Assembly (NCBI GenBank): GCA_044892525.1
Contig: CM097886.1
Coordinates: 49,848,001-49,912,000, forward strand
Direction: 5' to 3'
DNA: 64,000 nucleotides
DNA from: Schmidtea polychroa
Lineage: Eukaryota
Shown here in pieces: positions 13,101 through 58,134 of this stretch. The notes below the pieces were generated by a model. That model saw only the letters and a program-made list of their open reading frames with translations, made no database searches and was not told where the DNA came from. The translations under genes and the position numbers were made by a program. The stretch's first letter is position 1, and each line of letters starts with the position of its first letter.

Positions 13101-16100
13101 GATCTTGAAGTCGAGTATGTCACTGATGAATGAGATATTATTAAGATAGAAATGTTTCTTCTTCTTTTGTGTTAATTCCCTAGATCTTTTTGGGGTAGAA
13201 TTCATTCTTTCAATATATATATATATATATTTAATACTATTGGATTTCTTACATATGTAGAATTCCGATTGGAAAATAACGTTTTCACGACTTTTTGATT
13301 TGAATTTGAAAATTGGAGTTTTGAAATGTATTTTGATTATTATCTTTGAAAACAACAATAAACCGGTATAAGGGAGACGAAAATTAACGATAAAAAGCTG
13401 AAATAAAATTTATTAATATATAATATATAATATTCCTCTAATCGAATATATTATATTTGTTTGGTGAAATCTGATCAACCAAAATAAAATTAAAACTATT
13501 AGAAAATAAAATTTATTGATGGCATATATTTTTGTATCTTGATATTTTATTATTATTAATTTATTATTAAGAATTAGATATATATTTAAGACCAATAGTA
13601 AAAAATGTTTTTAGAAAATTAACACCCATCAGCTATTTATATTTAATTTTTTATATATTAGTGAACTATCAGATCAGTCTCTTTTATCAAACCTTCAAGT
13701 AAGATATTCACAGAAATTGATTTACGTAATTATTTTTATTTTTTTAATTTTTATTTTGTGATAAATATTATAGACTTATATTGGCAGCATACTGATAAGC
13801 ATAAATCCTTACACCGAATTAGGAATTTATGATAAAAAATACATTGTTTCCTACCAAAACAAACTAATACAAGACATGCCACCGTAAGTTTGTTTTGTAA
13901 AATATTTTATTCCTAAATATTGATAATAAAATCATAAAAATTTTATTCATAATATTTTTGCAATACGATAATATTATAAAATATTTTATATATTAAATAA
14001 TATTCTTATATTTTGTTTAATCTTGTAATTGAAACAAATGCTTTTAAAATCTTTTAAAATATGTTGTTTTGAAAATTTTCTAAGCTAATCACTAATCATA
14101 AAATAATGGTAATTAAAATGCGATTTTTTACACCATAGAGTAATAAATTATGTAAAATTTTCTGATATAACTCACATATGTGTTCTTTTTATAAAATATT
14201 TTTAATTGTACACGAAACAAAAGCTCTGAGTAGTGTGCTTCTATTTTTTACGATAATCTCAATATTCAAGTTCCTTGAAATTTCTCTGCAATTGAAGCAT
14301 ATACTGTTTATTATTATTCGTCTAAAATATTCAAAATAGGTGATTAAATTTTAAATTAAACAGTTTGTTTGTTAAAACAAGAAGACTTTTAATTTTAATT
14401 CTTTAAAAGGAAGTTCTGTGATTTTTTTTTTAAAAATTAAGTATAAAATGTTATTTTTAACTAGTTAAGGCGCCCATTGAAAAATACCGAATACTTTAAT
14501 ATTATATACACGAAATATTTATTAATAATTCAATTTTTGCTAATATTATGCAAATTTAATAAAGAGCCTCTTGAAAAACTACATTGCATGTGAATTGTCT
14601 CTGGTCATTCGATAATTTTCCTTGCTGTGGATTCGATTCAATATACACCTTCACTTGACTTGCAACTCTTGATCGTGAGAAAGCCTCATACAATTGGCTG
14701 TTTGAAAATACTGGGTTCTCCAAAAAATTCCAATGTAGTCAAATGATCAAAATTGAAAAAAACAAAATGAAAATATTTTTTGAATAAATTTTAAATTCAA
14801 AAAATATTCCTATATATAAATTTTGAAAGCGTTACACAGTCAGTCAGTCAGTCAGTGATGAACGAAAATATATATACATATGATGTTTTCTAATAAATAT
14901 TAGTAAAGTTCTAAACAGTTATGGAAAAGTATTAGAAGAATTATTCAAAGATAAATTGAGAATGAAGCAATACGATCTTGTAGTTCAGGGATTCTCTGTC
15001 TATTCAAATGGGAGATCAAGAGATTTGAGAACTTTCAAACTGTATTATTGTAATTTCTTTGGGATTTTCTTATGAATGAATTAATTATGAAAGAAAAAGC
15101 GAATTAGAATGTAAGAAAAATAAAGATTTTAACCAGTATTGTAAAAAATAAGTTTACAATAATTCCAAGTTATTTAAGTTTTACAACATTTGAAATTGAT
15201 GGTTATTATTTGCCATCAAGTTCTTTGACTAATTCCTACTTTCTGGTTCTAAAATAAAATAGTAGCGGACAAAATGGTATAGATTTAAGTCTATTTAAAT
15301 AGAGTAATAAGTTTATTTTTTAAATTTAATTAGTTTTTTCCCCTATAATATATACTATATTATATACTTTACTTCCATCTTTTTGAGACAGAACAGCACC
15401 AATGCGGTCAAAACTTGCATCTGTATCCAAAATGAATGGCTTAGAAAAATCTGAGAACTTCAATACAGGTGAAGACGTCAATTTCAGTTTTAAATTTTGA
15501 AATGAAGTTTCACACTCATCAGTCCACATAAGCTTCTTTTGTTTACTTCCACATAACGCTTCTAATACTTTGGAATCTTTGGTGTAATTTTCTATAAATC
15601 TGCTATAGTAATTTACCAAGCCTAAAAATCCTCTCAAACTTTTGACGCATTTAGGTCTTTCAAAATTTTTAGTAGTTTCAATCTTGCTTTCATCCGTACG
15701 TATTCCATCTTCACCAATGATATGACCCAAAAATTTTACTTCTTTCCTTTTGAATTGACATTTTGCTGGACTTATTTTAAGATTTGCTAATTTAATCTTT
15801 TGAAAAACCTTTTCAATGGTACTATAATGTTCATTCAATGTCTTTGAAAATATAAGGATATCATCCAGATATACAATTGTTCCTTTCCAATTTAATTCTC
15901 CAAGAACCAAATTCATGAGTCTTTGAAATGTTGCTGGTGCGGCTGCTATTCCATATGGCATTCTGTTAAAGAAATATTGCTTGCTTTTTGTCGAAAATGC
16001 TGTTTTCAATTTTGATGCATCATCGAGTTCTACTTGATAATAAGCATTGCCTAAATCAATTGTCGAGAAAAACTTTGCTCCGTCAAGAATATCTAATAAT

Positions 16101-19100: not shown

Positions 19101-20540
19101 GAATATCTCCTTCTTTATATTATAGACGTATTAAGTTATGATCACATAAACTCCATATCCACAAATTCTATACAGATTTTTCTGGATAATTTATTTTTTA
19201 TTTCGTTTCATTGTGCATTTTTGTGTGGACTCTTTATTATAATTATTCATATATATAAATAAGTTTTTATTAAAAATTTTTTACCAGTCTAAAGAGTTCA
19301 CAATTAAAGATCGAAACGATGCTGCAAATCTCAAAGAATTTATGAATCAGTGGGACTCATTAGGATTGACGAGTGAAGATTTAGATGTTGCAATGAGGAT
19401 CTTGAGTGCCGTTTTGCATCTTGGTAATATTAAATTCATGGAGGAACAAGTAAATTATCGATTATTTTTAAGGGTTTATGAAAATATTTTTTAATTAAGG
19501 AGGCCAGTTATTTAGTGGAAACTGAGAATATTGGGATCGTTTCTAAAATGTTAAAAATTGACCATGAGTCATTGAAACAATGCCTAACGATGAAGACAAC
19601 TGTAAGAAGATTTTTTAATATTTACTTTGTTTAGAATACTAATTAATATATTGGCTAATATTAAAATAACGAATTTTATTTGTTTTTTTATTAATTTATA
19701 TTAAAAAAAATATGTCCTTTTTTCGAAATTACTGATCGCTAGCTGAACATTAATCATTTTTACCTGAAAATGCCATATTAGCTTTGGAAATAGTTTGATC
19801 CTAGGATCTAAGTTTCTTGTTTCGATTTGATTCATTTAAACAAAATATATAAATAGAATTTTATATTTTAAAAGATATTTTTAAAAGAAATTATTTGTAT
19901 GTTTCCAAAAAATAATTAAAGAGTAAATAATAGGTTTTGAGTAACACTTAACGTTTTAGTTAAGATTTACATATTTATCATAGTTTTACAAGTTTATATG
20001 TAATTGTAATATTTATCACATAATTAGAAATCTTTCGATTTATTATAATAATTTATTATCTTAATAATAACACTAACAATTGTATTTATTAAAAAACTTG
20101 ACTATGAATCAGTAAAGATATCNNNNNNNNNNNNNNNNNNNNNNNNNNNNNNNNNNNNNNNNNNNNNNNNNNNNNNNNNNNNNNNNNNNNNNNNNNNNNN
20201 NNNNNNNNNNNNNNNNNNNNNNNNNNNNNNNNNNNNNNNNNNNNNNNNNNNNNNNNNNNNNNNCGACTAATTTTTTAGTCCGCAGAGGTGATTATGATTT
20301 TTCATACGCCATGTTTACAAGTTTACAGATTTTTTCTGTGACCAAGCTATTTTGCAAGCGATGTGATTTCCAGTGTACCGGGGAAAGTATGCAATAGAGT
20401 TGAATCAACAATATTGTATACTTACCTGGCGCGAAGAGAAATCTTCGTGTCTCCCGCATAGTACTGATGAGAGCCAAAAGCTCGAAACTAGTCTACTATT
20501 GGGATTTGCACTGGGTATCACAAAGCTTGTACTGTTTATT

Positions 20541-23155: not shown

Positions 23156-24931
23156 CTTATTAGTTGACCGAGAATCCCGCAAATCCCTAAATCGAATCTG
23201 ATATCTATGACAAGAATTAATGAGATATAATTTATTCAAACAATAATTCTATGTTACAGCATTTTAGGCATCACTTAATAAGTGTGTAAAGCACAGAGTA
23301 TTTACTGGTCCGTGCAGTGCAAAATTGCAATATATTAGACCAATAGAAATTGAATATTATCAATCAATCAAAATCTTTATAAATATGCTGATTTTACATC
23401 TGAATGCACACAATTAGTATTGAACTGAATTCCAAGAATATCGATATTTTGAATGGCAACTTTGGAGGTTTTCTGAAATAATTAAAAGTCATTTAACCGA
23501 AAAAATAATTGTAAATGTTTTGTATTTCAAAAACAATCAATTTTATTTATACATTTCATTTATTTTAATTATATATAAAAAAATCTCATTAAAAATATTT
23601 CATTGTTTTATATTTAAATTAGGTGTAAAGGATATTGTATTAATTTTAGAACTTCCCTGACAACAGTTTGGAACAGCTATGTATCAATTACGCAAATGAA
23701 ACTTTACAACAATTCTTCAACCGATACGTATTTCAACTGGAACAGGAAGAATACAAAAAAGAAGGTATCAGTTGGCACTACATAGCCTATCCAGACAACC
23801 AACCGATTATAGACTTATTGTCCTCAAAACCAAATGGCATCATACAGATCCTGAATGACGAGTGTTCCATACCCCAGGTTATTTATAATAATAATAATAT
23901 TAATATAATAATAATAATTTTTAGGGATCAGATGTATCATTTTTAAATAAATGCCACAATGTTCATGGTAAAAACGAGAACTATGAGAAACCGAAAAAAA
24001 CTCATCCGCCTCAATTTATCATTCATCATTTTGCTGGCAATATTTCTTATTCAGTGATAACTTATATAATATTGTTTCAGTAATTATTTTTCTCTCTAGG
24101 TTGCTGGATTTTTAGAAAAGAATCGTGACGTTTTACGAAAAGAAATCCTCAACATCATCGAAAATTGTGAGGTTATTGAGATTGCTACGATGTTTCGTAA
24201 GAAACGAGAACTACAAACGAAAAGCCCCACTGCCAAAGCAAGAACACCTGCTGTGATGGGAGATTTCCAAAATTCATTAACGACATTATTAGCGAAAATG
24301 AAAACGTTAGTTTTTGATTTGTTGTTCGAAGGGAATTTGAAAGACCTAATAAAATTGGAATTTGTACTTTATGAAATATTTAAAGGATTTCTACAGTTTG
24401 AATGACTTAGACAACAACATCACTTATAGATTCACATAATAAATTAACTTCTAAAACCTTTGAGCCTTATAACTTAAACTTAGATTTAGATCTACATGAA
24501 CAACCAAGATGGAGGTGACATAATTTTGTTTCATATTCAATTTTACTTACGTCGTCCAGAGAAGTAATAGTTAATCCCGGAGCCCGGAAATAACTCACTG
24601 AAACCCGGAGAGGTAGCAACCCTAATTACTAAATAAAAATATAAACTCCAAAAATTTATTTAATGAAAACTTGTCAAAACCTAATTATACTATTCTTATA
24701 AATATTATTTAAACAAATTTCCATGAAACATTTCTAAAAATAATTCAAATAGTACTTTCATACAAATTCAGTATACGATTTAAATTTCATATTCATTTTA
24801 ATTTTATAGCGTTTAATATCTAATCCAAAAGATTAAAAAAAATTTTATATTAAATTTGCTATTCAAATTCCTAAATAATTTCTAGAATTTTACGCAATAT
24901 AATTTTAATATTATTTTTAACATTATTCAAA

Positions 24932-25207: not shown

Positions 25208-25725
25208 TTTTTTAAAATGATCTAATTAATTTTATAAATTTAAACATTTAGCTGTCAACCTTGGTTTATTCGATGCTTGAAACCAAACACAACAAAAGAA
25301 GCATTAAAATTTAATAAAGACATTGTCATGGATCAAATGAAATATACTGGAATTCTTGAAACTGTAAAAATCAGAAAATCCGGATTCCCTATTCAAATTT
25401 TATTCAGCGTATTTTTGTCTAGATTCTATTTGCTTGTCACCAAAGAAATAAGGAAAGCAAGTCTACAAGGTCAACAGGAAGCTTGCTTGAAGTTGATGAT
25501 CAAGTTCAAAGGTGTAAAAAATAAGCATTTTGAACTAGGAAAAACGAAATTGTTTTTGAAAGAAGATTTTGCTCGGCATTTAGAGAAACAAGTTCAAATC
25601 ATTCGCAATCGAAGTGCTGTGACAATTCAAAGAAAATGGCGTGCATATTGGAAGATCCGATTGGTCATTATACAAAATCAAGCAGCTACCAAAATACAGT
25701 CAATTGTTCGGGGATTTATAGACAG
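7112..25725 (+). CDS. MYO15: Myosin motor domain and first two IQ motifs (exons 1-14)
   Basis: [22 protein letters not shown]-loop GESGAGKT, switch [16 protein letters not shown], switch [35 protein letters not shown], then IQRKWRAY and IQSIVRGF. Confidence 0.96.
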
Positions 25726-28700
25726 GTTGGCTGACATTTTACACTTTTTTATGATTTTCTTTATTTTTATTTATTAATAATATTTGTTACCGTTTGCAAA
25801 AAATATTAGAGTTCTTTGTTACTTAACATTCAATAGTATCAAATATTTGATTAAGGGGTTTTCATTAGCCATCTGAAGTTCATTAGGAATATCAACATAT
25901 TTTATTTTAAAAATGGAAACATATGGTAATTAAAAAAATAAATACAGTAGACCCCCGCCTTACCATGACTCACAATTACGACTAGCCTAGCCACGCATTC
26001 CCCCAGCCTACAATAGTTAGGCCTTAACTTCAATGAAAGTATAATGACTAATTTTGTAACAAAATACTAGACATTCATGTTTTCAATCACAATACTGCCG
26101 AATATTATTAAGAATTTTGTTTTATTTTTAATATTTATTAATAAGTGAATAATATCTAGTGAATAATATTTAAAATACAAACAATATTTCTTTCATAAAA
26201 AAAATTTAAACTACAATTTTATTAATTAAATTTGGTACAATTGTGTATTTGAGTACAAAAGCTACTTTTCGTGTGATTGAGAAGAGCAGTATTCAATTGG
26301 GTCATCGTCGATTGCAACTACATCATTTTCAATTGTAAAATCTTCTATCACGACTGTATTATCAACCTCCATTGATTGGCTGGCACATACAGGTTGAGCA
26401 CCTTGAGCATGCCCGAATTAATCTCTTCGTAGGCCCTAGGCACTTTTACCTTTAACCCTATCGTCTTTTGCCAGTATCCCTAATGAAGTCAGCTGTGGTT
26501 TATTTTTAAAATGCGTTTTTTTAATTCCAAAGTGTTTTTGTTTAACAACACTTTATTTAAATAACAACGTTTAGTTTCATTCCATATTGGTTTATTTTAT
26601 GAATGTTATTTTGTGAATATTATTTGCGCCTTTATTTCGCTTTATAACGTTTTTCTACTACGATCGATATTACATGAAGAAATGCTTATTTCGTATATGT
26701 ATGACGATGATGAGTACCAATTATTATACTTTAAGTCTTTTGTTTCTAAGTTTAAATTCCACGCATTTGAAAACAAAAATTTTAAACCTGCTTGATATGA
26801 TTGGCTGGTTTATTTTCAATTGCAAAGAAAATTCATTTTCTTACATATGTATACGAATGAAATTAAATTTTCTGTGATTATAGCTGTGCAACCATAGAAA
26901 CTGATTTTTTTACAAGTAATTTTCTGAAAAGATTAAGAAATTTCTATTGTGTTTCTACTTTGTTAGAGTTATCTAGTTATAACAAATAATATTGCTGTAA
27001 AACTATAAATATTAATTACTTATTAAAAGTAAGTAAATTAAAAATAAGAAAGTAAGAAAGTAAAATGTCTGACGGATATAAGAGAAAACATGAATCGGGC
27101 TCCGAAAAGCGTAAAAAGAAAATAGTCAAAGAAGAAGCATTGAAAAAAATGAAAGGTTCACTACTCAAATATATAACGGAAACAAGAGGAAATAATGAAA
27201 GCTGGTCTACAAATGTAACCGAATTTATTGCTCCAGAAGACCAAAATCAAAATAAAACTTCTAATAATGGAAATTATCTTGGTTGTATCGATCTTATAGC
27301 CGAATTTGATCCTTTTTTAAAAGAACATATTCGAAGACATGCAAATGCTGGAAGAGGAAATGTTTCCTATTTATCTAATGCTATATGTGAAGAATTTATT
27401 GGTATATGTAATGTACAGTCATACATTTTATTTATTTTTAAACAAGGTTTCGCGACACTTTGTTATTTTATTGAGGGTAAGCCGTAATGGCAAAGGAATA
27501 AAATATACTATATAGCGATAATTTACTATGGTAAATTATCGCTATAGAAAAATTGACAAAACGAAAAAAAACCAATAACTCCATTAAAATATACAACTGA
27601 AAGAAACCAAAAAATAACGATAGAAATAGCTTTGAAATAAAATCTACCAGACTAAAAACGAATAAAAGACGAAGATCATAATAAATAGCCGAAATAAAAG
27701 AAAGCAAAAGATATCCGAAAACAAAATACTCTTCGAATTTGCCTATATCCGAAACTAAAGAAAACCAAAATACCCTTCGGATTAACTTATACCTGAAAAC
27801 AAAATATCCTTCGGATCAATCTATATTCAGAATCCCTTCGGATTAATTTATATCCGAAACCAAAATACCGTTCGGGTCAATCTATATTCAGATCTAAAAT
27901 AAACTAAAATACCCTGAGAAACAAATTATACTCGAGACTAAAAGAAACCTAACTATCCTGAGAAGAGAATTATATTCGAAACGAAGTCCATATAAGAGCG
28001 TATTATTTTATTTATTTCATTAATAAAAGTTATTGTTTGTATGTGTTATTGTTAATTCATTACTGTATTTTTATACATTCCTACATACATTCACCCCAGC
28101 TGTCCCGAGACAGTTTATTTACTGGAGACTCGGCTGGGCTCTTCAAATCTCTATTACACACGCAATCACTCATCAACTACACAAAAAAAACAAATATAGA
28201 TCAACGAATACAATAACAGTATACTAGGATCTAAAGTTACAACGCAGATAATATCTGAAATAAAATATTATGGAATCAGCATTGATTCAACTCCTGATAT
28301 TAGTCATATGGACAAGCTTACCGTGATCATTCGGTATGTACTTAAATGTGGAAATGTGGTTGAACGATTTTTAAAATTTATTGCAATTGAACAACACGAT
28401 GGAAAATATTTATTCGACATTATACGACATACTTTGGAACATTATAACATAAGTATTAGAAATTGCAGGTCCCAATCATATGATAACGCCAGTAATATGA
28501 GCGGCATATATGCAGGTGTACAAGCTAGATTTTTGAGAAATAAATAGTCTGGCTGAATGGGTTCCATGTGCTGCTCATAGTCTTAATTTGCTAGGTTCAA
28601 CTGCTCTGGAGTGCTGCTTGAAAGCAGTAAAGTTTTTTGGAATTTTACAAGCAATATACACTTTTTTTTGTACTTCACCACAAAGATGGTCCAAATTTAA

Positions 28701-31700
28701 AGACAATATGAAAGAAAATACTTGTGTTGTTAAATATTTATCAGAAACCAGATGGTCTATTCGACATGATGCTACTAAGGCTCTATTTATGAATTATTCA
28801 GAAATTCAACAAGCATTGTTTGAAATAACTGAAAGCGAACGTCAACCTGCTGTGGCTGTGCAGGAAGCGAAATCTTTAATAAAAAAGCTGAACAATTTTG
28901 AAACAGCATTGATGTGTGTTATTTGGAATGATTTATTACAAAATATTAATATTGTCAATAAAGCTCTGCAGGAGACTGGCATAGAATTATGCACTATTGT
29001 AAAATTATTTGATACTCTCATAGTTTACTTTCATGATATTCGTTTAGAGTTTGATAAATTTGAAACCATGGCAAAAAAGATTACATCCTCCGAATATAAA
29101 GAATATACACAACGTAAACGAACACGAAATAGATTTTTTGATGAAGTTTTAGACAACACAGATCCTAGCTTGAGGCTAAGTGCAAGAGACAAATTTCGTA
29201 TAGAATCTTTTTATATAATAGTAGATAGACTTATAATTGAAATGCGTAAGTGACTTGGAGCATATCAAATGTTATATGAAAGGTTTAATTTTTTGGTGGA
29301 CAGAAGTTTAACAAATAATGAAATAGTTTCGAAAGCAAACCAGTTAGTGCAAATATATTCTTCAGATGTTGAACATGCATTTGTTGACGAGTTTTTATTA
29401 TTTTCACGAATGTATGGGAATAAAAAATCAGTGAAGGAAATGATAATTGCACAAATAAATGATAAACTAGTTACCAGTTTTCCTAAAGTAAATATTGTGT
29501 TAAGAATTTATTTATCGATATTTGGAACGAATGCGGAAGGGGAACGGAGCTTTTCAAAGCTTAAAAGGAACGATTATCATATCTTACGCTTTTATCAATT
29601 GAAAGTGATTTAATGCGAGAAATTAGTTTCGAAGATGTTATTGTCGAATTCGCCAATAAAAAATGTAGGAAGGTTAGTTTAGGTAATAATTAAATAAATT
29701 GTTTACTAAATTAATGATTTTTTTTTGGTTTTTTGAAAATAAATTTTGAATTATTTTGGATTAAGTGAAGTTTTTCTGTTCATGCTTTGGTTGAATATTT
29801 ATTATATAAATCTCTCGTAAATAATAATATGTATACATTTTCGTAGGCCATTTACAGTTCGTAGGCCCTAGGCACTGCGCCTATTGTGCCTATGGGATAA
29901 TGCGGGTGTGACCTTGAGCACCCCCAAGAATAACTGGAGTCTTCATAAAATAACAATCTAATGTTTTTTGAAATGATGGCTTTTTTCATAATATATTTGT
30001 CTGTACCAAGTGTAAGCTTCCTTTATTAATGAATTAACCTTCGAACTACGTTGAAAATTCGGGTCATCATTTTCAAGACCTACGACGAATTAGCCATTTA
30101 TAACATTGGGTCAATGGGAAATAAAACCTCTCTTTATGACTGCTCACATTGCGACTTCTTTTCAGCAACCAATTAGGTCGTAATTGCGGGGGTTTACTGT
30201 ATATCAAGTTCAAATATTTAAAAATTCATTGGAGCTTGTGTAAAAGTACCTATGTGAAAGTATATTAGGTATCAATGTCCTTAATTAGACGCTAGGTTGC
30301 TGTAATGGGATGTATTCTAAACTTCTTTAGAGTTTCATTCTTTAAATTACTAAACATTGTTTAAATTATTGTGAAAATGAAATAAAATTTTTTGTGAGAA
30401 AAGCCTTAGCACAAAGGTGTTAAATGGATCATTTTATAATGATTTGAATAACTTTACTGACATTTTTTTCTCAGGCGAAGAATCAGGAAATTGCATATAG
30501 GAATTGTCAAATTGCAGGCATTCGTTCGAATGCAAATCGCCAGAAAAAAATTTCTGCGGGTTATTACGATAATAAATTTACTTTATTTTTTCACTCTACT
30601 CGTTTAGGCTCATCCATCATTTACAAAGTTATCCATTTACAACAAGCCCATTGAACCGAAAGGCCAAGATAATTCGAAACTGACTGCATACAAGGTAAAT
30701 TGCAAAATTATTCACCAAAAGATAAACTATTGAATTTAGGCACCAGTTAGTGGAATTCTTAAAAAGGGCAAAAAAAATAAAAAAAAGACTTCTATTGGAA
30801 ATGCGTTTAATTATGATTTGTTAAAAATACCGATTGAATTAGCTTTCTTATTGGATAAAACAGAAGGTATATTTAAAACTTTTAATCGTATTAATGGTAA
30901 GGCTAAAACAATTTGTAAAATATTTATAAAAGTAAAAAAGAAAAATAGAAAATATAGATAAATATCCAATTGAGGGAGCCATTATTAAAATTAATCAAAC
31001 TACACTCTGCATATCCAATCACATGAGTAAATGAGAATGTAATAAAAGGTCCTTGGGGTCTTTTCAAAAGGAAATTTTAAATTATGTTTGAAAATATTTC
31101 TTCATATTCGGACACGTTTATGTGAAGTTGAAGATTTTATCGTGAATAATCGACCTTTGATGTATTAGCAGTTAGAAGGCGTGGTACATAGCTATCAGAA
31201 ATATCTGGAGAGAAAAGGTGTTGACATTGAAACGCACTGTTGTCTCTCTGATCGGGGTTTTTCTTTCACTTTGAAAGATTTTATATGACTTTTCTGTTGA
31301 TCTCACATGGACTTCTTGGATTTTCTAGATCAACCACAGAGGTTTTTCCAGCTCTATATTCATTGAACCATTGTTTTATTGTTGCCAATGGAATAATTTC
31401 TTTGCAATAGACATCATTCAATTCAATTTTAGTTTCATTTCAATTTTTCCCTTCAAATACAAAAACCAAATCCCACGGCAAAATTACACGCTTTTCAATG
31501 AGATTTTCAAAGTAACACAACAGTTGGTCACCAAACGATAACCAACTAAAACAAAATACTTTATGATTTATTTCTTAACAATATTTTAAAATTCCCTTTC
31601 ACCTTTCTATATTAGGCTCACTAATTATAGGGCACAACACGAATGCAGATATTTAAGACAAAAATTTACAATAAATTTCAGTTGATTATTGTATTTCAAA

Positions 31701-53600: not shown

Positions 53601-55248
53601 TAAATAGGTAACAAATAGATATAATAATAGAAGATATAATAATTTGCTTTTATTTGACTAAAGATGGCAGTTATGTAGCTAAAACTGATAATAGACACAA
53701 ATACAGAATCCTTGAGTGATCGAGTATCATCATTTTTTTCAATTTACCATTGTTGTATTACATGTATGAGAATATAAATTATAAAACCCGACAATGATTT
53801 TATAGTGACTATATTACATAGGAAGGCTTTCACTTAATTTGATAAAATAATGGTTTCCAGAGAGGATGGAACGTAGTATGAATTTTGTATCAGGGTGTCA
53901 AACACCTTAGCTATGTCATTGCTTTCAATAGATGCTAATGTTATAGGTAAATAATTTCTATTAACTGCATTTGTGTAAATATTTCTCTGCCAGGAGCTCG
54001 GGGGGGGGGGAGGTTGGGGGAGTGAGTGGACAAACGCCAAAGAGACTTGATGAGGTCATTTCAACATTAATTTATTACCTACCATGGAACTCGTTTTAAT
54101 TTTATTTATTGCAAAGATATGTTTTTCAATTCAATAAATTTATTCTTTTATTTTTGAATTTTACATTTTATTGCAATTTAAGAATATTGTGAAAAGTTGC
54201 CTCGATTTGGATTGATAAAATGTCAAATTACTGATGTCAAACCTCTTACAAAGCCTGGACAATATTTTATCGTTTTCAGTTCCAATTCCATTTCATTAGT
54301 GGAAAACGAATCTCAAGAACATATTATGGACTTTATGATTTCAGAATTTCGTTCATTTCAAGTTTCCATTGAAAATTCTACAAAATTCCATTTTATCCTG
54401 CGATATAGAAATGAAGAAGAAATTCAANNNNNNNNNNNNNNNNNNNNNNNNNNNNNNNNNNNNNNNNNNNNNNNNNNNNNNNNNNNNNNNNNNNNNNNNN
54501 NNNNNNNNNNNNNNNNNNNNNNNNNNNNNNNNNNNNNNNNNNNNNNNNNNNNNNNNNNNNNNNNNNNNNNNNNNNNNNNNNNNNNNNNNNNNNNNNNNNN
54601 NNNNNNNNNNNNNNNNNNNNNNNNNNNNNNNNNNNNNNNNNNNNNNNNNNNNNNNNNNNNNNNNNNNNNNNNNNNNAATATTATAATAAATATTATAAGC
54701 AAGCAGCTAGGGAATTTAAACTATATGGTTGTGTCAAATTCATATAAAGTACGCAATGTGTTTATTAATAAGTCTAAAACTCCTATTCTGATTTCGGTTA
54801 TCAGTTTACATGTAATGAATGTCATGCCACATACATTGGAAAGACTTCCCGTCATCTAATGTATTCAAGCTCGAGAACATTATTGACCGAACTCATTGAC
54901 TAATATTAGCGAGTAAGAGTAAAATATGTAAGTCTGATTTTAAAATTTCATTAAAAAATTTCGATAATTATTGGGAACTTGTAATTTGTGAAGAGTTATT
55001 GATAAAGTCATCAGATCCGAAAACTAACATTCAAAATGAAGTGNNNNNNNNNNNNNNNNNNNNNNNNNNNNNNNNNNNNNNNNNNNNNNNNNNNNNNNNN
55101 NNNNNNNNNNNNNNNNNNNNNNNNNNNNNNNNNNNNNNNNNNNNNNNNNNNNNNNNNNNNNNNNNNNNNNNNNNNNTAGGGGGAGAAATTAAAAGTTCTT
55201 CTCATTCAATATGAAATGATAAAGAGGCTACGATTGATAGAAAAATGA
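7112..55248 (+). CDS. MYO15: Unconventional myosin class XV-like (motor, 3 IQ, MyTH4, FERM-like/Pro-rich, degenerate SH3, MyTH4, FERM); 45 exons
   Basis: Manual splicing with GT-AG at every visible junction and consistent phase through exon 43 into exon 44: 7112-7173, 13662-13725, 13774-13883, 17022-17096, 17141-17371, 17428-17491, 17548-17661, 19288-19449, 19500-19601, 21557-21793, 23650-23877, 23925-24053, 24100-24305, 25252-25725, 30475-30559, 30608-30694, 30740-30866, 33344-33498, 35485-35583, 36158-36232, 36282-36472, 36522-36694, 36740-36812, 36857-37030, 37085-37174, 38367-38592, 38687-39411, 42090-42132, 44288-44392, 46451-46577, 47255-47697, 47748-47883, 48071-48189, 48248-48484, 48536-48592, 48698-48999, 49043-49158, 49775-49851, 49895-49977, 50028-50152, 50200-50294, 51423-51809, 51864-52116, 54183-(>=54427, end in gap), 55180-55248 (last exon tentative). 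Tail motifs [39 protein letters not shown] and ELYFSRFY resemble myosin XV/Sisyphus as recalled; no alignment was run. Confidence 0.87.
9394..9531. repeat. Foldback palindrome, family A
   Basis: Roughly 55-bp imperfect inverted arms (caattaaatgataatataag...). Same family as 42389-42542. Confidence 0.75.
10351..10483. mobile_element. Tigger-like MITE
   Basis: Degenerate TIRs TAGTGACACCTCGCTATACGTTC / GAACATATACCGAAGTACCACTC, flanked by TA. Confidence 0.55.
12215..13210 (-). mobile_element. Penelope-like retroelement 3' fragment (GIY-YIG and tail)
   Basis: ORF 12732-13358 contains [30 protein letters not shown] and is homologous to the copy at 1.5-2.5 kb. Confidence 0.88.
14461..14883 (-). 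mobile_element. Non-autonomous Helitron-like element
   Basis: On the - strand it reads A|TCATATGTATATAT ... CTAG|T, with a (CAGT)n microsatellite near the 5' end. The 3' hairpin is weak. Confidence 0.5.
15326..16112 (-). mobile_element. Ty3/Gypsy pol fragment (RT and start of RNase H-like region), no LTRs
   Basis: [45 protein letters not shown] and [18 protein letters not shown]; 227-aa open frame. Confidence 0.93.
16400..16683 (-). mobile_element. hAT (Charlie/Buster-type) terminal fragment
   Basis: The reverse complement begins CAGTGGTGGCCAAC followed by CGATCGACCGGTCGATCG subterminal motifs. The other end is not found. Confidence 0.6.
18120..18317. repeat. Foldback MITE, family B
   Basis: Near-perfect inverted arms of about 60 bp plus outer arms ttgaatttattaaaagagagtgt. 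Related shorter copies lie at about 7810-7880, 20086-20122 and 52455-52520. Confidence 0.8.
18600..19240 (-). mobile_element. Degenerate Mutator (MULE) transposase remnant
   Basis: [20 protein letters not shown]...FYQL and [13 protein letters not shown]...HPNMWR resemble the CxFH..RK and RTNNxxEGWH..HPNIW motifs. The frame is broken. Confidence 0.7.
20281..20540 (+). mobile_element. Short hammerhead-bearing element (Penelope pLTR/retrozyme-like), copy 1
   Basis: About 250 nt closely matching 49475-49740. It contains the hammerhead and is followed by a long (TAA)n run. Confidence 0.7.
20458..20499 (+). ncRNA. Minimal type I hammerhead ribozyme motif (copy 1)
   Basis: ATAGTA-CTGATGA-GAGC CAAAA GCTC-GAAAC TA GTC-TACTAT. 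Stem I is ATAGTA/TACTAT, the CUGAUGA and GAAA cores are intact, stem II is GAGC/GCTC, and stem III is the palindrome ACTAGT. Predicted cleavage is after C20493. Confidence 0.88.
22715..22790 (+). mobile_element. hAT-like left terminus
   Basis: CAGGGCCGTAACAAGG followed by GCACAGGGCGC. No matching right end or TSD is found. Confidence 0.4.
24575..24624 (-). mobile_element. TAGGGTTGC-type DNA transposon end
   Basis: The reverse complement reads TAGGGTTGCTACCTCTCCGGG with CCCGG repeats. A related end lies at 45450-45547. Confidence 0.4.
26408..29910 (+). mobile_element. hAT element with disrupted ZMYM1-like/DUF4371 transposase
   Basis: Perfect 8-bp TSD ACCTTGAG. ORF pieces include [56 protein letters not shown] and [11 protein letters not shown]. 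Confidence 0.95.
27407..28218. mobile_element. Solo LTR inserted in the hAT transposase
   Basis: TG...CA termini (TGTAATG / AATAACA) and a 5-bp TSD GTATA. Removing it restores EEFI-GILGSKV in frame. It carries internal TATCCGAAAC-type repeats. Confidence 0.85.
30475..37174 (+). CDS. MYO15: Third IQ motif and first MyTH4 domain with following segment (exons 15-25)
   Basis: [15 protein letters not shown]; [15 protein letters not shown]; ILRIM; [10 protein letters not shown]; [12 protein letters not shown]; KFVSD; KGWSVSV; [14 protein letters not shown]. Phases are consistent. Confidence 0.88.
31150..31560 (-). mobile_element. Degenerate mariner transposase N-terminal remnant
   Basis: [36 protein letters not shown] is HTH-like, followed by YVPRLLT. 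Confidence 0.6.
35797..36026. mobile_element. piggyBac-like MITE
   Basis: TTAA|ACCTTTTGCGAC ... GTCGCGAAAGGG|TTGA, a degenerate TTAA TSD. Confidence 0.5.
38367..48999 (+). CDS. MYO15: Myosin tail: Gln/His/Pro-rich low-complexity region, FERM-like subdomains and degenerate SH3 (exons 26-36)
   Basis: ORFs 38681-39415, 47188-47787 and 48251-48535 splice in phase. The region contains a poly-Pro run and the segments PWTCMLKRE|IYLPNE and ISHSGVRFV. Confidence 0.82.
38598..38680. repeat. (TAT)n microsatellite; similar runs at about 20543-20609, 24933-24992, 25137-25204 and 56440-56525; (AT)n at 23100-23150
   Basis: Direct reading. These runs explain the poly-Y, poly-I and poly-L ORFs in the track. 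Confidence 0.97.
39900..40048. mobile_element. Short TIR element with GACGATTCATCC subrepeats (superfamily uncertain)
   Basis: 31-bp inverted repeats with 2 mismatches. The TSD is not resolved. Confidence 0.65.
42389..42542. repeat. Foldback palindrome, family A
   Basis: Roughly 70-bp arms with about 4 differences around a 15-nt loop. Confidence 0.85.
43224..44010 (+). mobile_element. Non-autonomous Helitron-like element
   Basis: The 3' end has a GCGAAGC-centred hairpin (CTCGGGCGAAGCCGGG) about 12 nt before CTAG|T. The 5' end A|TCTATCC is tentative. Confidence 0.6.
44946..45150 (+). mobile_element. mariner 5' fragment
   Basis: TA|CGAGGGTTGCTATTT terminus and a transposase start MELTRENFR at 45121, then truncated. 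Confidence 0.7.
46620..46855. mobile_element. Stowaway-like MITE (Tc1/mariner)
   Basis: Perfect 26-bp TIRs CTCCCTCTGTCCAAAAATGATAGTCC with a TA TSD; 236 bp long. Confidence 0.92.
49043..55248 (+). CDS. MYO15: Second MyTH4 domain and C-terminal FERM domain (exons 37-45)
   Basis: [11 protein letters not shown]; [17 protein letters not shown]; FGPRK; [11 protein letters not shown]; FQKLFL|[10 protein letters not shown]. The tentative last exon reads [22 protein letters not shown]. Confidence 0.82.
49475..49740 (+). mobile_element. Short hammerhead-bearing element (Penelope pLTR/retrozyme-like), copy 2
   Basis: Second copy of the same element, with (TTA/TAT)n runs close to both sides. Confidence 0.7.
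49656..49697 (+). ncRNA. Minimal type I hammerhead ribozyme motif (copy 2)
   Basis: Identical 42-nt motif to copy 1. Predicted cleavage is after C49691. Confidence 0.88.
50450..51250 (-). mobile_element. Highly degenerate hAT transposase remnant
   Basis: [13 protein letters not shown] and [15 protein letters not shown]-like segments in broken frames. Confidence 0.45.
54690..55043 (+). mobile_element. Penelope-like GIY-YIG remnant in the last myosin intron
   Basis: [20 protein letters not shown] and [18 protein letters not shown]. Confidence 0.8.
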
Positions 55249-55832
55249 AGATCCAGCCTCTTAATTCATATATCAACATATTTAATAAATATTATATATC
55301 TGTAACTTTATTTTGTGCTTTTCTGTTGAAAGTGGATTACCAAAAATTTTATTGAAAACTCTTTCTGAAAAGACTCTTTGTTTTGTTTTTTATATCAGCA
55401 AATTCAAATTTTCTTTCGAAATAAATTATAGGGAAACTTATTTTCATGTCTTATCGGTTTTTCATGCTTATAGTGAGTCGTTACAAACATTAATTTCTGG
55501 GAGAACAACGTTCTTACAAACTACCTTAAATTTTTATTCCATGTATATTCACCATGGTCAAAGTAAGTAAAAAGTAAGAATTATCATAGATATATTTTAT
55601 ATCGGTGATTATTCCTACTTTTATGATAATATCGTGATAAGTATTGAACTAACTCATTACAGTATCTGACTTTTTGAAAGTACATTTGCAGTAAATTACC
55701 ATAAAATTTTAAAAATAAATTAGGAAAAATTGAAAAATTAATCAAATGTCTTCCTGTGATAAATACAAATATTTCACAAATATATTTCAAATCATTTAAA
55801 TTCGGAATAGAATGTATGTTTCATTTCCTTCA

Positions 55833-56472
55833 TTATCCAGCTCGTTCTAAAAGTTGGAGTAAGCGGCGCCTCCTGTAAATCATATTTGCTTTGATAGGAG
55901 TGCACGTTCCTCCCAAGGCGATGGGATTACAAGTTAAACGTTTCCTGAAAAATAAATTGTTATTATTAATAGTTGCAAGAAAATATTTTTTGATATTCTA
56001 AACCATGGTTCTTCAATCTCAATTCCACCAAACCTTTAGCTTCCTTGAAACATCTAAGGGGTTCTCGGAATTATTTATGGGGAAAGAGTTCATTCAATAA
56101 AGACTGATATTTTTGAAAATTTGACTTAATATAGAGAATACTTTTTTCTTAATAAGTAACCGTGGATTCTTTATGAATTTCCGTTGAAAAAGCATGCCTA
56201 ACACTTGAGACATTAGGAGACCTAAACTTAATTTTAAAAATAAAGGTTCCGTAAATAAGTTCATAAGTTAAAAAGGTTCCAGTGGCCTGTAATAGTCTAA
56301 TGACCTTGTTTTAAACCATCGAAATGATGTATTACATGCATGCAAAAAACAATATTTGTATAATCGTCAGATTCGATTGTTTGGATACTTGATAGGGATT
56401 GAGAATCATAATATATCTATAAATAATATTAATAATAATAACTATTAATATTATTATTATTATTATTATTAA

Positions 56473-56526
<54 letters not shown>

Positions 56527-56852
56527 CATTAAATCAAAGACATTTACTTCAAAACTTGATTAGTTAATTTTGTTTGAATTAATTGAGGATTTTCTTCCAA
56601 TATCTTTTGAACTAAAATAAATCTAGAGAGAATTATTAATTATTAACAAATGAATTAAAATCTCAAATTATTGTGAAATTAATATTACAAATATAGGATT
56701 TACCTTTGCGTGATGTCAATATTATTCCAAAAAGCTTGGATATTGGCCATGATTTTAGCTTCATTTTCCAACTTTTCAATCTCATTTCCATCACAATGAG
56801 CAAAGTCAACGAAAAGAACAATTGCAATTGCTAGATAGATGAAATATTTCAT
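55833..56852 (-). CDS. Small secreted prepropeptide (neuropeptide/hormone-like precursor, 86 aa, 2 exons)
   Basis: Exon 1 56852-56704 encodes MKYFIYLAIAIVLFVDFAHCDGNEIEKLENEAKIMANIQAFWNNIDITQ plus AG, followed by gtaaat. Exon 2 55944-55833 follows ttttcag and completes R then KRLTCNPIALGGTCTPIKANMIYRRRRLLQLLERAG*. The phase 2 junction matches. It has a hydrophobic signal peptide, RKR and RRRR sites, two Cys and a terminal Gly. Confidence 0.8.
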
Positions 56853-58134
56853 TGTTAATTCTTTTCAGCTTTTTTAGTTAGAAATTACCCGTTTTATATG
56901 AAATGATTTATTTACCCTTCTAATCTTTTTCAATTATTATCAACGATTCGTGACGATTTTTATTTCTTTATATCTATTTATTTTCATAATTTTCAGAATA
57001 TTAGAAATATTTCATTAGTTAATATTTAATTTAGATAATAATNNNNNNNNNNNNNNNNNNNNNNNNNNNNNNNNNNNNNNNNNNNNNNNNNNNNNNNNNN
57101 NNNNNNNNNNNNNNNNNNNNNNNNNNNNNNNNNNNNNNNNNNNNNNNNNNNNNNNNNNNNNNNNNNNNNNNNNNNNNNNNNNNNNNNNNNNNNNNNNNNN
57201 NNNNNNNNNNNNNNNNNNNNNNNNNNNNNNNNNNNNNNNNNNNNNNNNNNNNNNNNNNNNNNNNNNNNNNNNNNNNNNNNNNNNNNNNNNNNNNNNNNNN
57301 NNNNNNNNNNNNNNNNNNNNNNNNNNNNNNNNNNNNNNNNNNNNNNNNNNNNNNNNNNNNNNNNNNNNNNNNNNNNNNNNNNNNNNNNNNNNNNNTTTAT
57401 AGTCTTCAAACTCTTTTTTATAAATTCAATGGGAAAAAAATCAGCGGTGAAATTGGAAAAAAAGTTCTTATAATAATAATACTAATAATAAGAAGAAGAA
57501 GAAGAGGAAGAATATACAGCCTACCTTTAAGAATGTTTATAAATCCGCGTCAGACTCGAAGCATGTTGTTTATTGATATTGAAATGTTCTTGATGAATGG
57601 CACATTGAATCTCATAAAGGTTTCATAATACCCGATTTAAAGAATGCTTGAGACGTATTGTAGATTTTTTTTAAATTTTTTTTTAGTTTTGTTCTTAAAA
57701 TTTATTGTCTCTTACAAACATTTTCCTTTTGCAATTTTTTTTTGCAATTTTTTTGCATACTATTTTTCTCGGTTAAATATTAGTTGATAGAATTGTTGAA
57801 TTATTTGTTTGATCATTATTGATGAAAACCTATATTATACTATTATGATTTGTTTCATTGGAAGAATATAACTCAAAAATCTTTAATTCAAAGTTTTCTA
57901 TTTAATCTGATAAATAAAATGTCAAAATATTAATTCCTAACAAAGGTTAACTAAAAAATGTATCCGTTTTGGATGCGTTATTCATTCTCCAGATAATCAT
58001 AATCGTATTAATGCCCATCATATATTTTCCGAGAAGTTTTTGGAGAGACTTATTGATGCATTTTCCTTAATGAATTTTACAAAACAATAATTTTAAGAGA
58101 AACTAATTTTGTTTTAATCTGCCAAGTTCGGTAC

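What the first reader, a model, noticed from the sequence alone, without database searches (positions are those of the whole stretch)
55833..56852. Hidden two-exon prohormone-like gene encoding a Cys-ring, C-terminally amidated peptide (possible divergent calcitonin-type neuropeptide)
Seen: both exons fall below the ORF-track cutoff but splice in phase (AG|G = Arg) to an 86-aa precursor. It has a 20-aa signal peptide, an acidic propeptide, RKR, then LTCNPIALGGTCTPIKANMIYRRRRLLQLLERA-G-stop. Established: signal peptide + acidic spacer + dibasic site + N-terminal two-Cys ring + terminal Gly (amide donor) is the layout of calcitonin/CGRP-type precursors, whose mature peptides are about 31-37 aa. 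Inference: the uncleaved product would be a 33-aa amide of that size. Against this, it lacks the usual C-terminal Pro-amide, has a C-x8-C ring, and contains an internal RRRR. Cleavage at RRRR would instead give a 21-aa cyclic peptide plus LLQLLERA-amide, so it could be a new peptide family.
Basis: partly seen in the sequence, partly recalled or inferred. Interest (0 to 1): 0.82.

Follow-up and report, generated by a model that had tools for sequence, protein, structure and literature searches.

The report
Unannotated planarian Cys-ring amidated peptide gene
A small, expressed but unannotated flatworm (planarian) gene encodes a 111-residue secreted precursor of a disulphide-ring, C-terminally amidated peptide; it has three exons rather than the two proposed, and it is a plausible but unproven ligand for the planarian calcitonin-type receptors, which have no known ligand.

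Summary
The gene is real, but the exon model was wrong. Spliced contigs from three runs in two studies show three minus-strand exons (56852-56704, 56622-56548, 55944-~55770) with GT..AG introns and a poly(A) end. The precursor is therefore 111 aa, not 86, and the basic site before the peptide is KKR, not RKR.

The genome is a planarian that is not Schmidtea mediterranea. The gene is single copy. Among 1.84 billion representative proteins there is one homologue, an unnamed 112-aa protein that is 82% identical. It has the same architecture, with KKR plus the Cys ring and the C-terminal RRLLQLLERAG fully conserved, and it ends in -GK. The gene is absent from the published planarian prohormone catalogues.

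Calcitonin membership is not shown. Pfam, BLASTP and hhalign find nothing significant, and the invariant Ser-Pro-amide end is missing. Some features do match lophotrochozoan calcitonins: a C-x8-C ring within their x6-x10 range, an LGG-x-C ring motif, a 21-residue tail and an amidation signal. A small HMM scores it above 99% of constrained shuffles. Planarians also carry CT/DH31-type receptors, for which I found no reported ligand.

Best reading: an orphan secreted signalling-peptide precursor. Odds that it is calcitonin-type: about 0.3.

The parts
56892..56898 (-). TATAAAA box about 46 nt upstream of the ATG. Inferred promoter element; the transcription start is not mapped.
   Evidence: Read directly from the sequence. 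RNA contigs begin only at 56837, so the 5' end is not shown.
56704..56852 (-). Exon 1 coding part. It starts at ATG 56850-56852 and encodes residues 1-49 plus the first two bases of Arg50. Residues 1-20 (56793-56852) form a signal-peptide-like segment, MKYFIYLAIAIVLFVDFAHC.
   Evidence: Translation. Contigs of X1, X2 and X3 cover 56837-56704. The signal peptide is judged by inspection (K2, a 12-residue hydrophobic core, A-H-C before the cut). No predictor was run.
56623..56703 (-). Intron 1, 81 nt, GT..AG.
   Evidence: Joint 56622/56704 found in one contig in each of three runs, with ends CT..AC on the + strand (table 5).
56548..56622 (-). It encodes (R)FILVQKILEENPQLIQTKLTNQVL(K).
   Evidence: Contig blocks 56547-56622 in X1, X2 and X3. 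The G at 56547 is ambiguous with the G at 55944; a GT donor puts the exon end at 56548. The same residues are present in homologue P0001, 23 of 26 identical.
55945..56547 (-). Intron 2, 603 nt, GT..AG. It contains an (ATT)n-type microsatellite at about 56412-56538 and two dispersed-repeat fragments.
   Evidence: Contig blocks on both sides (table 8). The splice-site sequences were printed. The joint row was dropped by the tool because of the repeat.
55770..55944 (-). Exon 3. It holds the last base of Lys75, then KR, the peptide, Gly, the stop (55833-55835) and a 3' UTR of about 62 nt ending at a poly(A) site near 55770.
   Evidence: Contigs cover 55943-55803. An X5 contig ending at 55770 carries a 19-T loose end on the + strand, which is a poly(A) tail on the minus strand (table 7).
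55938..55943 (-). Lys76-Arg77 of the tribasic KKR site; Lys75 is split across intron 2. Predicted prohormone-convertase cleavage site.
   Evidence: KKR is conserved in P0001. Planarian peptidomics shows cleavage before Leu after KR or KK, for example KR.LSVPTYF and KK.LSIPTYW (Collins 2010, Table S2).
55839..55937 (-). Predicted 33-residue peptide, LTCNPIALGGTCTPIKANMIYRRRRLLQLLERA. The Cys80 codon is 55929-55931 and the Cys89 codon is 55902-55904, giving a C-x8-C ring with LGG-T-C.
   Evidence: Ring plus flank is 12 of 12 identical and the tail 17 of 21 identical to P0001. Calculated monoisotopic mass 3751.08 Da (amide, one disulphide).
55863..55874 (-). Internal RRRR (residues 99-102). A possible second convertase site that would give a 21-aa ring peptide and LLQLLERA-amide.
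   Evidence: The homologue has KQRR here, so only the RR pair is conserved. Whether the site is cut is not known.
55833..55838 (-). Gly111 (amide donor) followed by the TAA stop.
   Evidence: The homologue ends -ERAGK, a Gly plus basic amidation signal.

Best explanation
This is a real, single-copy, three-exon gene of a freshwater planarian. It encodes a 111-residue preproprotein of the peptide-hormone/neuropeptide type.

Proposed mechanism, with each step marked:
- Shown: the mRNA (about 0.4 kb) is spliced from exons 56852-56704, 56622-56548 and 55944-~55770 and is polyadenylated.
- Inferred from sequence: a 20-residue signal peptide directs the protein into the secretory pathway. A convertase cuts after KKR77. 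Carboxypeptidase and the amidating enzyme turn the terminal Gly into an Ala-amide. Cys80 and Cys89 form a 10-membered ring.
- Product: either one 33-residue cyclic amide, or, if the conserved RR inside the tail is also cut, a 21-residue cyclic peptide plus LLQLLERA-amide.
- Inferred: the product acts as an extracellular signal on a G-protein-coupled receptor.

The family cannot be assigned by sequence. The closest layout is the calcitonin type, with an N-terminal ring for receptor activation and an amidated C-terminal end for binding the receptor's extracellular domain. Planarian CT/DH31-type family-B receptors are the leading candidate targets.
For: - Spliced contigs in X1, X2 and X3 (two studies), a GT..AG joint and a poly(A) end.
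- A 336-nt in-frame ORF across the three exons.
- Each exon occurs once in the genome.
- The only homologue among 1.84 billion representatives, P0001 (112 aa), is collinear and 82% identical. KKR plus the ring is 15/15 identical, RRLLQLLERAG is 11/11 identical, and it ends in -GK.
- Protein-language-model neighbours of P0001 are almost all neuropeptide or hormone precursors (DH31, PDH, NPS, urotensin-2B, NPFF, gastrin/CCK, FMRFamide-related peptides, NMU). All score below 0.9, so this is a lead only.
- Cleavage before Leu after KR or KK is documented in planarian peptidomics.
- Receptors are present. A family-B extracellular-domain exon in this genome has CLR and CTR as its best solved relatives (E about 1e-6). 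S. mediterranea CTRa, CTRb, DH31Ra and DH31Rb are listed in PMC12638048 source data.
Against: - There is no direct evidence for the peptide itself. It is absent from the 51 prohormones of Collins 2010 and from Ong 2016. No unassigned pc2(RNAi)-sensitive mass in Collins Table S6 equals a predicted product of the homologue.
- The cell type that expresses the gene is unknown, so a gland or defence role is not excluded.
- The signal peptide and cleavage sites were judged by eye; no predictor was run.
- The two species are close, so conservation discriminates poorly between regions (72-100%).
- The runs are only guessed to be RNA by the tool. Splicing plus single-copy exons argues that they are.
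Confidence: 0.65

Rival explanations
1. The gene is a true but divergent member of the calcitonin/DH31 family. The uncleaved 33-residue cyclic amide would then be the calcitonin-type ligand not so far recovered from freshwater planarians, and would activate their CTR/DH31R-type family-B receptors.
For: - The layout equals lophotrochozoan calcitonins read from Thiel 2021 supplement and Cardoso 2020: a basic site, one or two residues, then C-x6..10-C. Mussel CALCIa is also C-x8-C.
- The ring ends LGG-x-C, as in nemertean and phoronid NLGGHC.
- Exactly 21 residues follow the second Cys, then Gly.
- An HMM of 7 such peptides scores 3.5 bits. Only 0.4% of 3000 shuffles that keep both Cys and the Gly reach that score (1.1% for the homologue).
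- hhalign aligns the rings with P = 0.027.
- DH31 is the top language-model neighbour (0.88).
- No canonical calcitonin exon is found in this genome (a weak negative).
- Planarians have CTR and DH31R genes, while calcitonin is reported as not recovered from freshwater planarians (PMC13551398).
Against: - Ser-Pro-Gly at the C-terminus is invariant in all seven model peptides and in every other amidated lophotrochozoan calcitonin peptide read. Here the end is Arg-Ala-Gly.
- Pfam Calc_CGRP_IAPP and the DH31 family give no hit, even at E = 10.
- BLASTP against nemertean and phoronid precursor segments gives no collinear match (E = 0.19 and 7.2).
- hhalign probability is 1.8% and covers the ring only.
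- The tail is strongly basic, whereas calcitonin tails are acidic or neutral.
- The tail contains a conserved RR that may be cut.
- I noticed the LGG motif before running the shuffle test, so that p-value is post hoc.
- Only 3 of the 10 best language-model hits share a family with DH31, which the tool reads as 'family probably wrong'.
Confidence: 0.3
2. The gene encodes a secreted host-defence (antimicrobial) or gland/mucus peptide rather than a neuro-endocrine signal. The anionic propeptide would neutralise a cationic mature peptide until cleavage.
For: - The predicted mature peptide has net charge about +4.7 and pI 10.8, while the pro-region is acidic (pI 4.6).
- A signal peptide, an acidic spacer, KR, a cationic peptide and an amide is also the plan of many animal antimicrobial-peptide precursors (general knowledge).
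- The gene is restricted to planarians as far as the searches reach.
- It is fairly abundant in whole-animal contigs, although contig depth is a poor measure.
Against: - The 21-residue tail is not more amphipathic than its shuffles (hydrophobic moment 0.29, p = 0.45).
- Language-model neighbours are hormone precursors, not defence peptides.
- It is single copy, whereas defence-peptide genes are often in expanding families.
- The ring and the C-terminal octapeptide are perfectly conserved, which suits a receptor ligand better.
Confidence: 0.12
3. The reader's two-exon, 86-aa form (exon 2 skipped) is the main or a regulated product.
Against: All three contigs that span the gene include exon 2, and none joins 56704 to 55944. 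The homologue's protein also contains the exon-2 residues. Contigs can hide minor isoforms.
Confidence: 0.05

Closest known systems
Lophotrochozoan calcitonin-type precursors (nemertean, phoronid, brachiopod, mollusc; Thiel et al. 2021 PMC8557429, Cardoso et al. 2020 PMC7200681, Conzelmann et al. 2013 PMC3890597)
   Same: A signal peptide and a helical Leu-rich spacer. A basic cleavage site one or two residues before the first Cys. A ring of 6-10 residues (here 8, as in mussel CALCIa). An LGG-x-C ring end. 21 residues after the ring. A Gly amidation signal. A total length of 31-34 residues.
   Different: No C-terminal Ser-Pro-amide (here Arg-Ala-amide). A basic rather than acidic tail with an internal RRRR/KQRR. 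One peptide copy in a 111-aa precursor, whereas most of those precursors carry two or more copies in 150-250 aa or more. No significant sequence match by Pfam, BLASTP or hhalign.
Orphan 'secreted peptide prohormone' (spp) genes of Schmidtea mediterranea (Collins et al. 2010 PMC2953531; spp-20, Ong et al. 2016 PMC4825013)
   Same: A small planarian-restricted precursor with a signal peptide, KR/KK sites cut before Leu, and C-terminal amidation. No homologue found outside planarians.
   Different: It is not one of the 52 named genes (string searches of their sequence tables). No mass-spectrometric or in-situ evidence yet. It carries a disulphide ring; the family table of that set lists no calcitonin-type or ring-peptide family.
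Elevenin / L11 peptides
   Same: A two-Cys ring of similar size shortly after a basic cleavage site (from my own knowledge of the family).
   Different: Elevenins end a few residues after the ring and are not amidated, and their ring has a conserved F-V-F..P motif. None of this is present here. I did not test this with a profile.
Arthropod/annelid diuretic hormone 31 (Pfam PF27927)
   Same: A single-copy amidated peptide of about 31 residues in a precursor of about 105 aa. It is the top language-model neighbour (0.88).
   Different: DH31 has no Cys ring and ends in Pro-amide. There is no Pfam hit, and only 133 of 256 features are shared, below the count usual for true family members.

Membership tests
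Calcitonin/CGRP/DH31 family (lophotrochozoan calcitonin type) | Two Cys forming an N-terminal ring directly after a basic cleavage site | tested here: met
   KKR-LT-C-x8-C. The ring range in real lophotrochozoan calcitonins read here is x6 to x10. The disulphide itself is inferred.
Calcitonin/CGRP/DH31 family (lophotrochozoan calcitonin type) | C-terminal Pro-amide (Ser-Pro-Gly plus basic residues in the precursor) | tested here: not met
   S29, P30 and G31 are invariant in alignment A1. Here and in the homologue the end is E-R-A-G. Amidation is kept, but the proline is not.
Calcitonin/CGRP/DH31 family (lophotrochozoan calcitonin type) | Mature length about 31-34 residues, with about 19-21 residues after the ring | tested here: met
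   33 residues in total, 21 after Cys89, the same as nemertean and mussel peptides. This holds only if the internal RR is not cut.
Calcitonin/CGRP/DH31 family (lophotrochozoan calcitonin type) | Statistically significant sequence similarity to family profiles | tested here: not met
   Pfam gives no hit at E up to 10. BLASTP gives E = 0.19 and 7.2, both non-collinear. hhalign gives P = 0.027 and probability 1.8%, ring only. The HMM gives 3.5 bits, better than 99.6% of constrained shuffles but far below any search threshold.
Calcitonin/CGRP/DH31 family (lophotrochozoan calcitonin type) | Ring motif (N)-L-G-G-x-C of the 'b-type' peptides | tested here: met
   A-L-G-G-T-C here, against N-L-G-G-H-C in nemerteans and phoronids. 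The comparison is post hoc.
Calcitonin/CGRP/DH31 family (lophotrochozoan calcitonin type) | A cognate CTR/CLR/DH31R-type family-B receptor in the same organism, activated by the peptide | tested here: inconclusive
   A receptor is present. The HRM exon at G000:C2:81812713-81812886 has CLR and CTR as best hits, but its TM3-4 exon does not discriminate. S. mediterranea CTRa/b and DH31Ra/b are listed in PMC12638048. Activation cannot be tested here, and the complex prediction gave no answer.
Neuropeptide / peptide-hormone prohormone (general class) | N-terminal signal peptide | tested here: met
   MKYFIYLAIAIVLFVDFAHC, judged by inspection; no dedicated predictor was available. 75% conserved in P0001.
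Neuropeptide / peptide-hormone prohormone (general class) | Conserved basic convertase sites and a Gly amidation signal flanking a conserved peptide | tested here: met
   KKR, RR and the terminal G (GK in the homologue) are all conserved. Ring 100% and C-terminal 11 residues 100% identical.
Neuropeptide / peptide-hormone prohormone (general class) | Expression in neurons or endocrine cells, and detection of the processed peptide | not testable with these tools
   Only whole-sample contigs were available. The peptide is absent from published planarian peptide lists.

The most novel reading that the evidence does not exclude
This is the calcitonin-type ligand not so far recovered from freshwater planarians. 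It would have diverged so far (Ala-amide instead of Pro-amide, a basic tail) that homology searches missed it, and it would pair with planarian CTR/DH31R receptors for which I found no reported ligand. That would mean triclads did not lose calcitonin signalling, and that the Pro-amide is dispensable for a calcitonin-type ligand.
Probability: 0.3. Interest if true: 0.7.

Novelty: new member of a known kind. Interest (0 to 1): 0.5.

Why it matters
Planarians are a main model for regeneration and for peptide control of reproduction, yet their catalogue of peptide-hormone genes (52 named) comes from 2010-2016 and lacks several ancestral bilaterian families. A 2026 review states that freshwater planarians failed to yield, or have lost, calcitonin among others (PMC13551398). 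Receptor phylogenies nevertheless list two CTR-type and two DH31R-type receptors in S. mediterranea (PMC12638048), and I found no ligand reported for them.

This gene is not in the protein collection searched for this species, is conserved in a second planarian, and has the only layout among known bilaterian peptides that fits those receptors. It therefore gives a concrete, cheap test: synthesise one to three peptides and assay four receptors. Even if it is not calcitonin-type, it adds a new disulphide-ring amidated peptide to the planarian signalling repertoire. It also shows that short multi-exon peptide genes are still being missed by annotation.

Tried and rejected
- **Two-exon model.** Rejected by the contigs.
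- **Paralogues in the genome.** None found for exon 1 or exon 3.
- **Homologue searches.** phmmer of exon 3 against 1.84 billion representatives found only P0001. The word-indexed search of 5.8 billion proteins with P0001 found only itself. P0001 has no encoding contig on record, and its cluster has one unnamed UniParc member.
- **Wasted search.** A myosin exon used to name the organism returned nothing.
- **Hydra.** My first guess from the AT-richness. I dropped it after an earlier scan note on the mpl-1 gene pointed to a planarian. Smed-NPY-8 then matched at 82% and 74% across two adjacent exons, which also shows the species is not S. mediterranea.
- **Family searches.** Pfam on the peptide and on P0001 gave nothing relevant. 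BLASTP against two calcitonin precursor segments gave nothing collinear.
- **Canonical calcitonin in this genome.** The calcitonin HMM against the six-frame genome gave no hit; the tool warns that an empty answer proves little.
- **Polyclad calcitonin.** No sequence is held in the Piovani 2023 supplement.
- **Complex prediction.** The receptor HRM exon with the 34-residue peptide scored 0.02: no verdict, and not evidence either way. The extracellular domain was only one exon, and no alignments were used.
- **Mass match.** Predicted products against Collins Table S6 gave none. The 2163.3 entry is assigned to SPP-5.
- **Amphipathic-helix test of the tail.** Not significant.
- **Full-length search with this species' own protein.** The full 111-aa protein of this species has no reference, so I did not type it into the database tools. 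I used exon references and P0001 instead.

Full report
**What is in the sequence**

On the minus strand an ATG at 56852 opens a 49-codon stretch, MKYFIYLAIAIVLFVDFAHC DGNEIEKLENEAKIMANIQAFWNNIDITQ. It ends at a consensus donor, CAAAG|GTAAAT, after 56704. Further downstream a polypyrimidine/AG acceptor, TTATTTTTCAG|G, precedes 55944. The frame then reads (K)KR-LTCNPIALGGTCTPIKANMIYRRRRLLQLLERA-G-stop, with the stop at 55833-55835.

**The exon structure is different**

I laid the contigs of four public runs on 55180-57040. Three runs of the window's own species (X1, and X2/X3 from another study) each have one contig of 338-351 nt. Each contig lies on three blocks: 56837-56704, 56622-56547 and 55943-55803 or 55816.
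- The 56622/56704 joint is listed with the intron ends CT..AC on the + strand, which is GT..AG on the minus strand.
- The second joint crosses a microsatellite, so the tool dropped its row, but the contig coordinates are contiguous (record positions 134/135 and 210/211).
- The G at 56547 is the same letter as the G at 55944. Placing it with exon 3 gives a GT donor, GAA|GTAAAT.
- The middle exon is therefore 56548-56622, 75 nt, and preserves the phase.

The spliced ORF is 336 nt and 111 residues. Exon 2 adds (R)FILVQKILEENPQLIQTKLTNQVL(K), and the basic site in front of the peptide becomes KKR, not RKR. A contig from a fourth run (X5) ends at 55770 with a 19-T loose end on the + strand, which is a poly(A) tail. 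That gives a 3' UTR of about 62 nt.

The tool only guesses that these runs are RNA. However, each coding exon occurs exactly once in the 781-Mb genome, so the intron-less form cannot come from a DNA retrocopy. Contigs can hide minor isoforms, so I give exon skipping about 5%.

**The organism**

The window is about 26% G+C. A large myosin gene lies on the + strand, and retroelement and hAT debris are present. An earlier scan note on the same genome mentions the planarian gene mpl-1.

I tested this with the Smed-NPY-8 sequence printed in Collins et al. 2010, Table S5. It matches two adjacent exons in this genome at 82% and 74% identity. The genome is therefore a planarian closely related to, but not, Schmidtea mediterranea.

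**Conservation**

A full HMMER scan of 1.84 billion representative proteins with the exon-3 peptide found one protein, P0001 (E = 3e-13). It is 112 aa and is an unnamed UniParc entry. It aligns without gaps to the 111-aa product at 82% identity and contains the exon-2 residues, which is independent support for the three-exon model.

Identity by region:

| Region | Identity |
|---|---|
| Signal peptide | 75% |
| Exon-1 propeptide | 72% |
| Exon-2 segment | 88% |
| KKR plus LTCNPIALGGTC | 15/15 |
| Tail | 17/21 |

All four tail changes fall in the middle (KAN to RAG, RR to KQ), and the last eleven residues, RRLLQLLERAG, are identical. P0001 ends in -AGK, a textbook amidation signal.

The species' own protein is not in the 5.8-billion-cluster collection, so the gene appears unannotated there. 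Six, then four, diagnostic strings shared by both orthologues are absent from the sequence tables of the 51 prohormones of Collins 2010 and from Ong 2016, which added spp-20.

**What kind of protein it is**

By inspection it has these parts, in order:
- a signal peptide;
- an acidic pro-region (pI 4.6);
- a monobasic site and then a tribasic site;
- a basic peptide (pI 10.8) with two Cys nine positions apart;
- a terminal Gly.

Planarian peptidomics shows that KR and KK sites followed by Leu are cut (KR.LSVPTYF.., KK.LSIPTYW..). The KKR|L site is therefore credible, and so is a cut after RRRR|L.

The language-model neighbours of P0001 are almost entirely peptide-hormone precursors: DH31, PDH, neuropeptide S, urotensin-2B, NPFF, gastrin/CCK, FMRFamide-related peptides and neuromedin U. 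All score 0.85-0.88, which the tool rates as a lead only.

I conclude, at about 0.65, that this is a secreted signalling-peptide precursor. The product is either a 33-residue cyclic amide (3751.08 Da) or a 21-residue cyclic peptide (2191.08 Da) plus LLQLLERA-amide (953.60 Da). A cationic defence-peptide role is the main non-signalling rival. The tail is no more amphipathic than its shuffles (p = 0.45) and the gene is single copy, so I put that rival near 0.12.

**Is it calcitonin-type?**

Formal tests fail:
- Pfam gives no hit at E up to 10.
- BLASTP against nemertean and phoronid spacer-plus-calcitonin segments gives only short non-collinear matches (E = 0.19 and 7.2).
- hhalign of a seven-peptide calcitonin alignment against the homologue aligns only the ring (P = 0.027, probability 1.8%).
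- The Ser-Pro-Gly end, invariant in all those peptides, is replaced by Arg-Ala-Gly.

Their rings span C-x6-C to C-x10-C, and mussel CALCIa is C-x8-C. The 'b-type' peptides end the ring with N-L-G-G-H-C, against A-L-G-G-T-C here. Most have 21 residues between the second Cys and the amidating Gly, as here.

An HMM of seven such peptides gives only 3.5 bits. Still, only 0.4% (homologue 1.1%) of 3000 shuffles that keep both Cys and the Gly fixed reach that score. I had seen the LGG motif before running this test, so the p-value is post hoc.

Context also matters:
- The genome has at least 13 hormone-receptor-domain exons and at least 28 family-B 7TM hits.
- One extracellular-domain exon (G000:C2:81812713-81812886) has CLR and CTR as its best solved relatives. 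Another is CRF-receptor-like. The TM3-4 exon of the first gene does not discriminate.
- The literature lists S. mediterranea CTRa, CTRb, DH31Ra and DH31Rb (PMC12638048 source data) and a calcitonin-receptor-like transcript (PMC3022928).
- A 2026 review says calcitonin and other ancestral peptides were not recovered from freshwater planarians (PMC13551398).
- A six-frame scan of this genome with the calcitonin HMM found no canonical calcitonin exon (a weak negative).

Weighing the layout, the motif and the receptors without a reported ligand against the missing Pro-amide, the basic tail and the possible internal cleavage, I put calcitonin-type homology at about 0.3. I do not file the gene in that family, because a defining feature was tested and not met. 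It may still work like one, with the ring engaging the receptor core and the conserved amidated C-terminus engaging the extracellular domain.

A structure-based complex test of the receptor exon with the peptide returned no verdict. It counts neither way.

**Verdict**

The finding is a genuine planarian prohormone-like gene that I could not find in the protein collections or the published prohormone catalogues. It is a new member of a known kind. It also yields a testable and moderately interesting hypothesis: that it is the ligand of planarian calcitonin-type receptors.

Noticed in passing
window 23668-54859 (+): A large multi-exon unconventional myosin gene (Myosin_head and IQ exons at 23668-23943 and 25277-25774; Pro-rich and FERM-like ORFs further on). 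Its 3' end converges on the peptide gene: an X2 contig of 1164 nt ends at 55180-55222, about 550 nt from the peptide gene's poly(A) site.
   Followed up: partly
window 12735-13358 (-), 15329-16009 (-), 29269-29610 (+): Transposon debris: an ORF with a GIY-YIG nuclease domain (Penelope-like?), a reverse transcriptase plus RNase H fragment, and a hAT dimerisation-domain ORF. The GIY-YIG element may relate to the hammerhead-bearing mobile element that earlier notes place at 20281-20540.
   Followed up: partly
window 56083-56125, 56243-56286, 56412-56538: Intron 2 of the peptide gene holds two short dispersed-repeat fragments and a long (ATT)n-type microsatellite. The fragments are matched with 5 mismatches by unrelated X5 contigs that run on into unlike sequence. 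The microsatellite made the read-laying tool drop a joint row.
   Followed up: no
G000:C2:81812713-81818858 (+); loci L004, L013, L014: A family-B GPCR gene. Its hormone-receptor-domain exon is closest to the human CGRP receptor (CLR) and calcitonin receptor (E about 1e-6). It is a candidate CT/DH31-type receptor of this planarian. The gene model was not reconstructed.
   Followed up: partly
G000:C1:268847006-268859294 and C1:269187788-269200080; C4:37.77-37.81 Mb; C2:120.43-120.57 Mb: Two family-B receptor loci with identical HRM and 7TM scores lie 340 kb apart, suggesting a recent segmental duplication. There are also two clusters of single-exon 7tm_2 ORFs (six at C4, three at C2).
   Followed up: no
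Given the four CT/DH31-type receptors, it would be worth comparing with this gene (a possible DH31-like partner).
   Followed up: no
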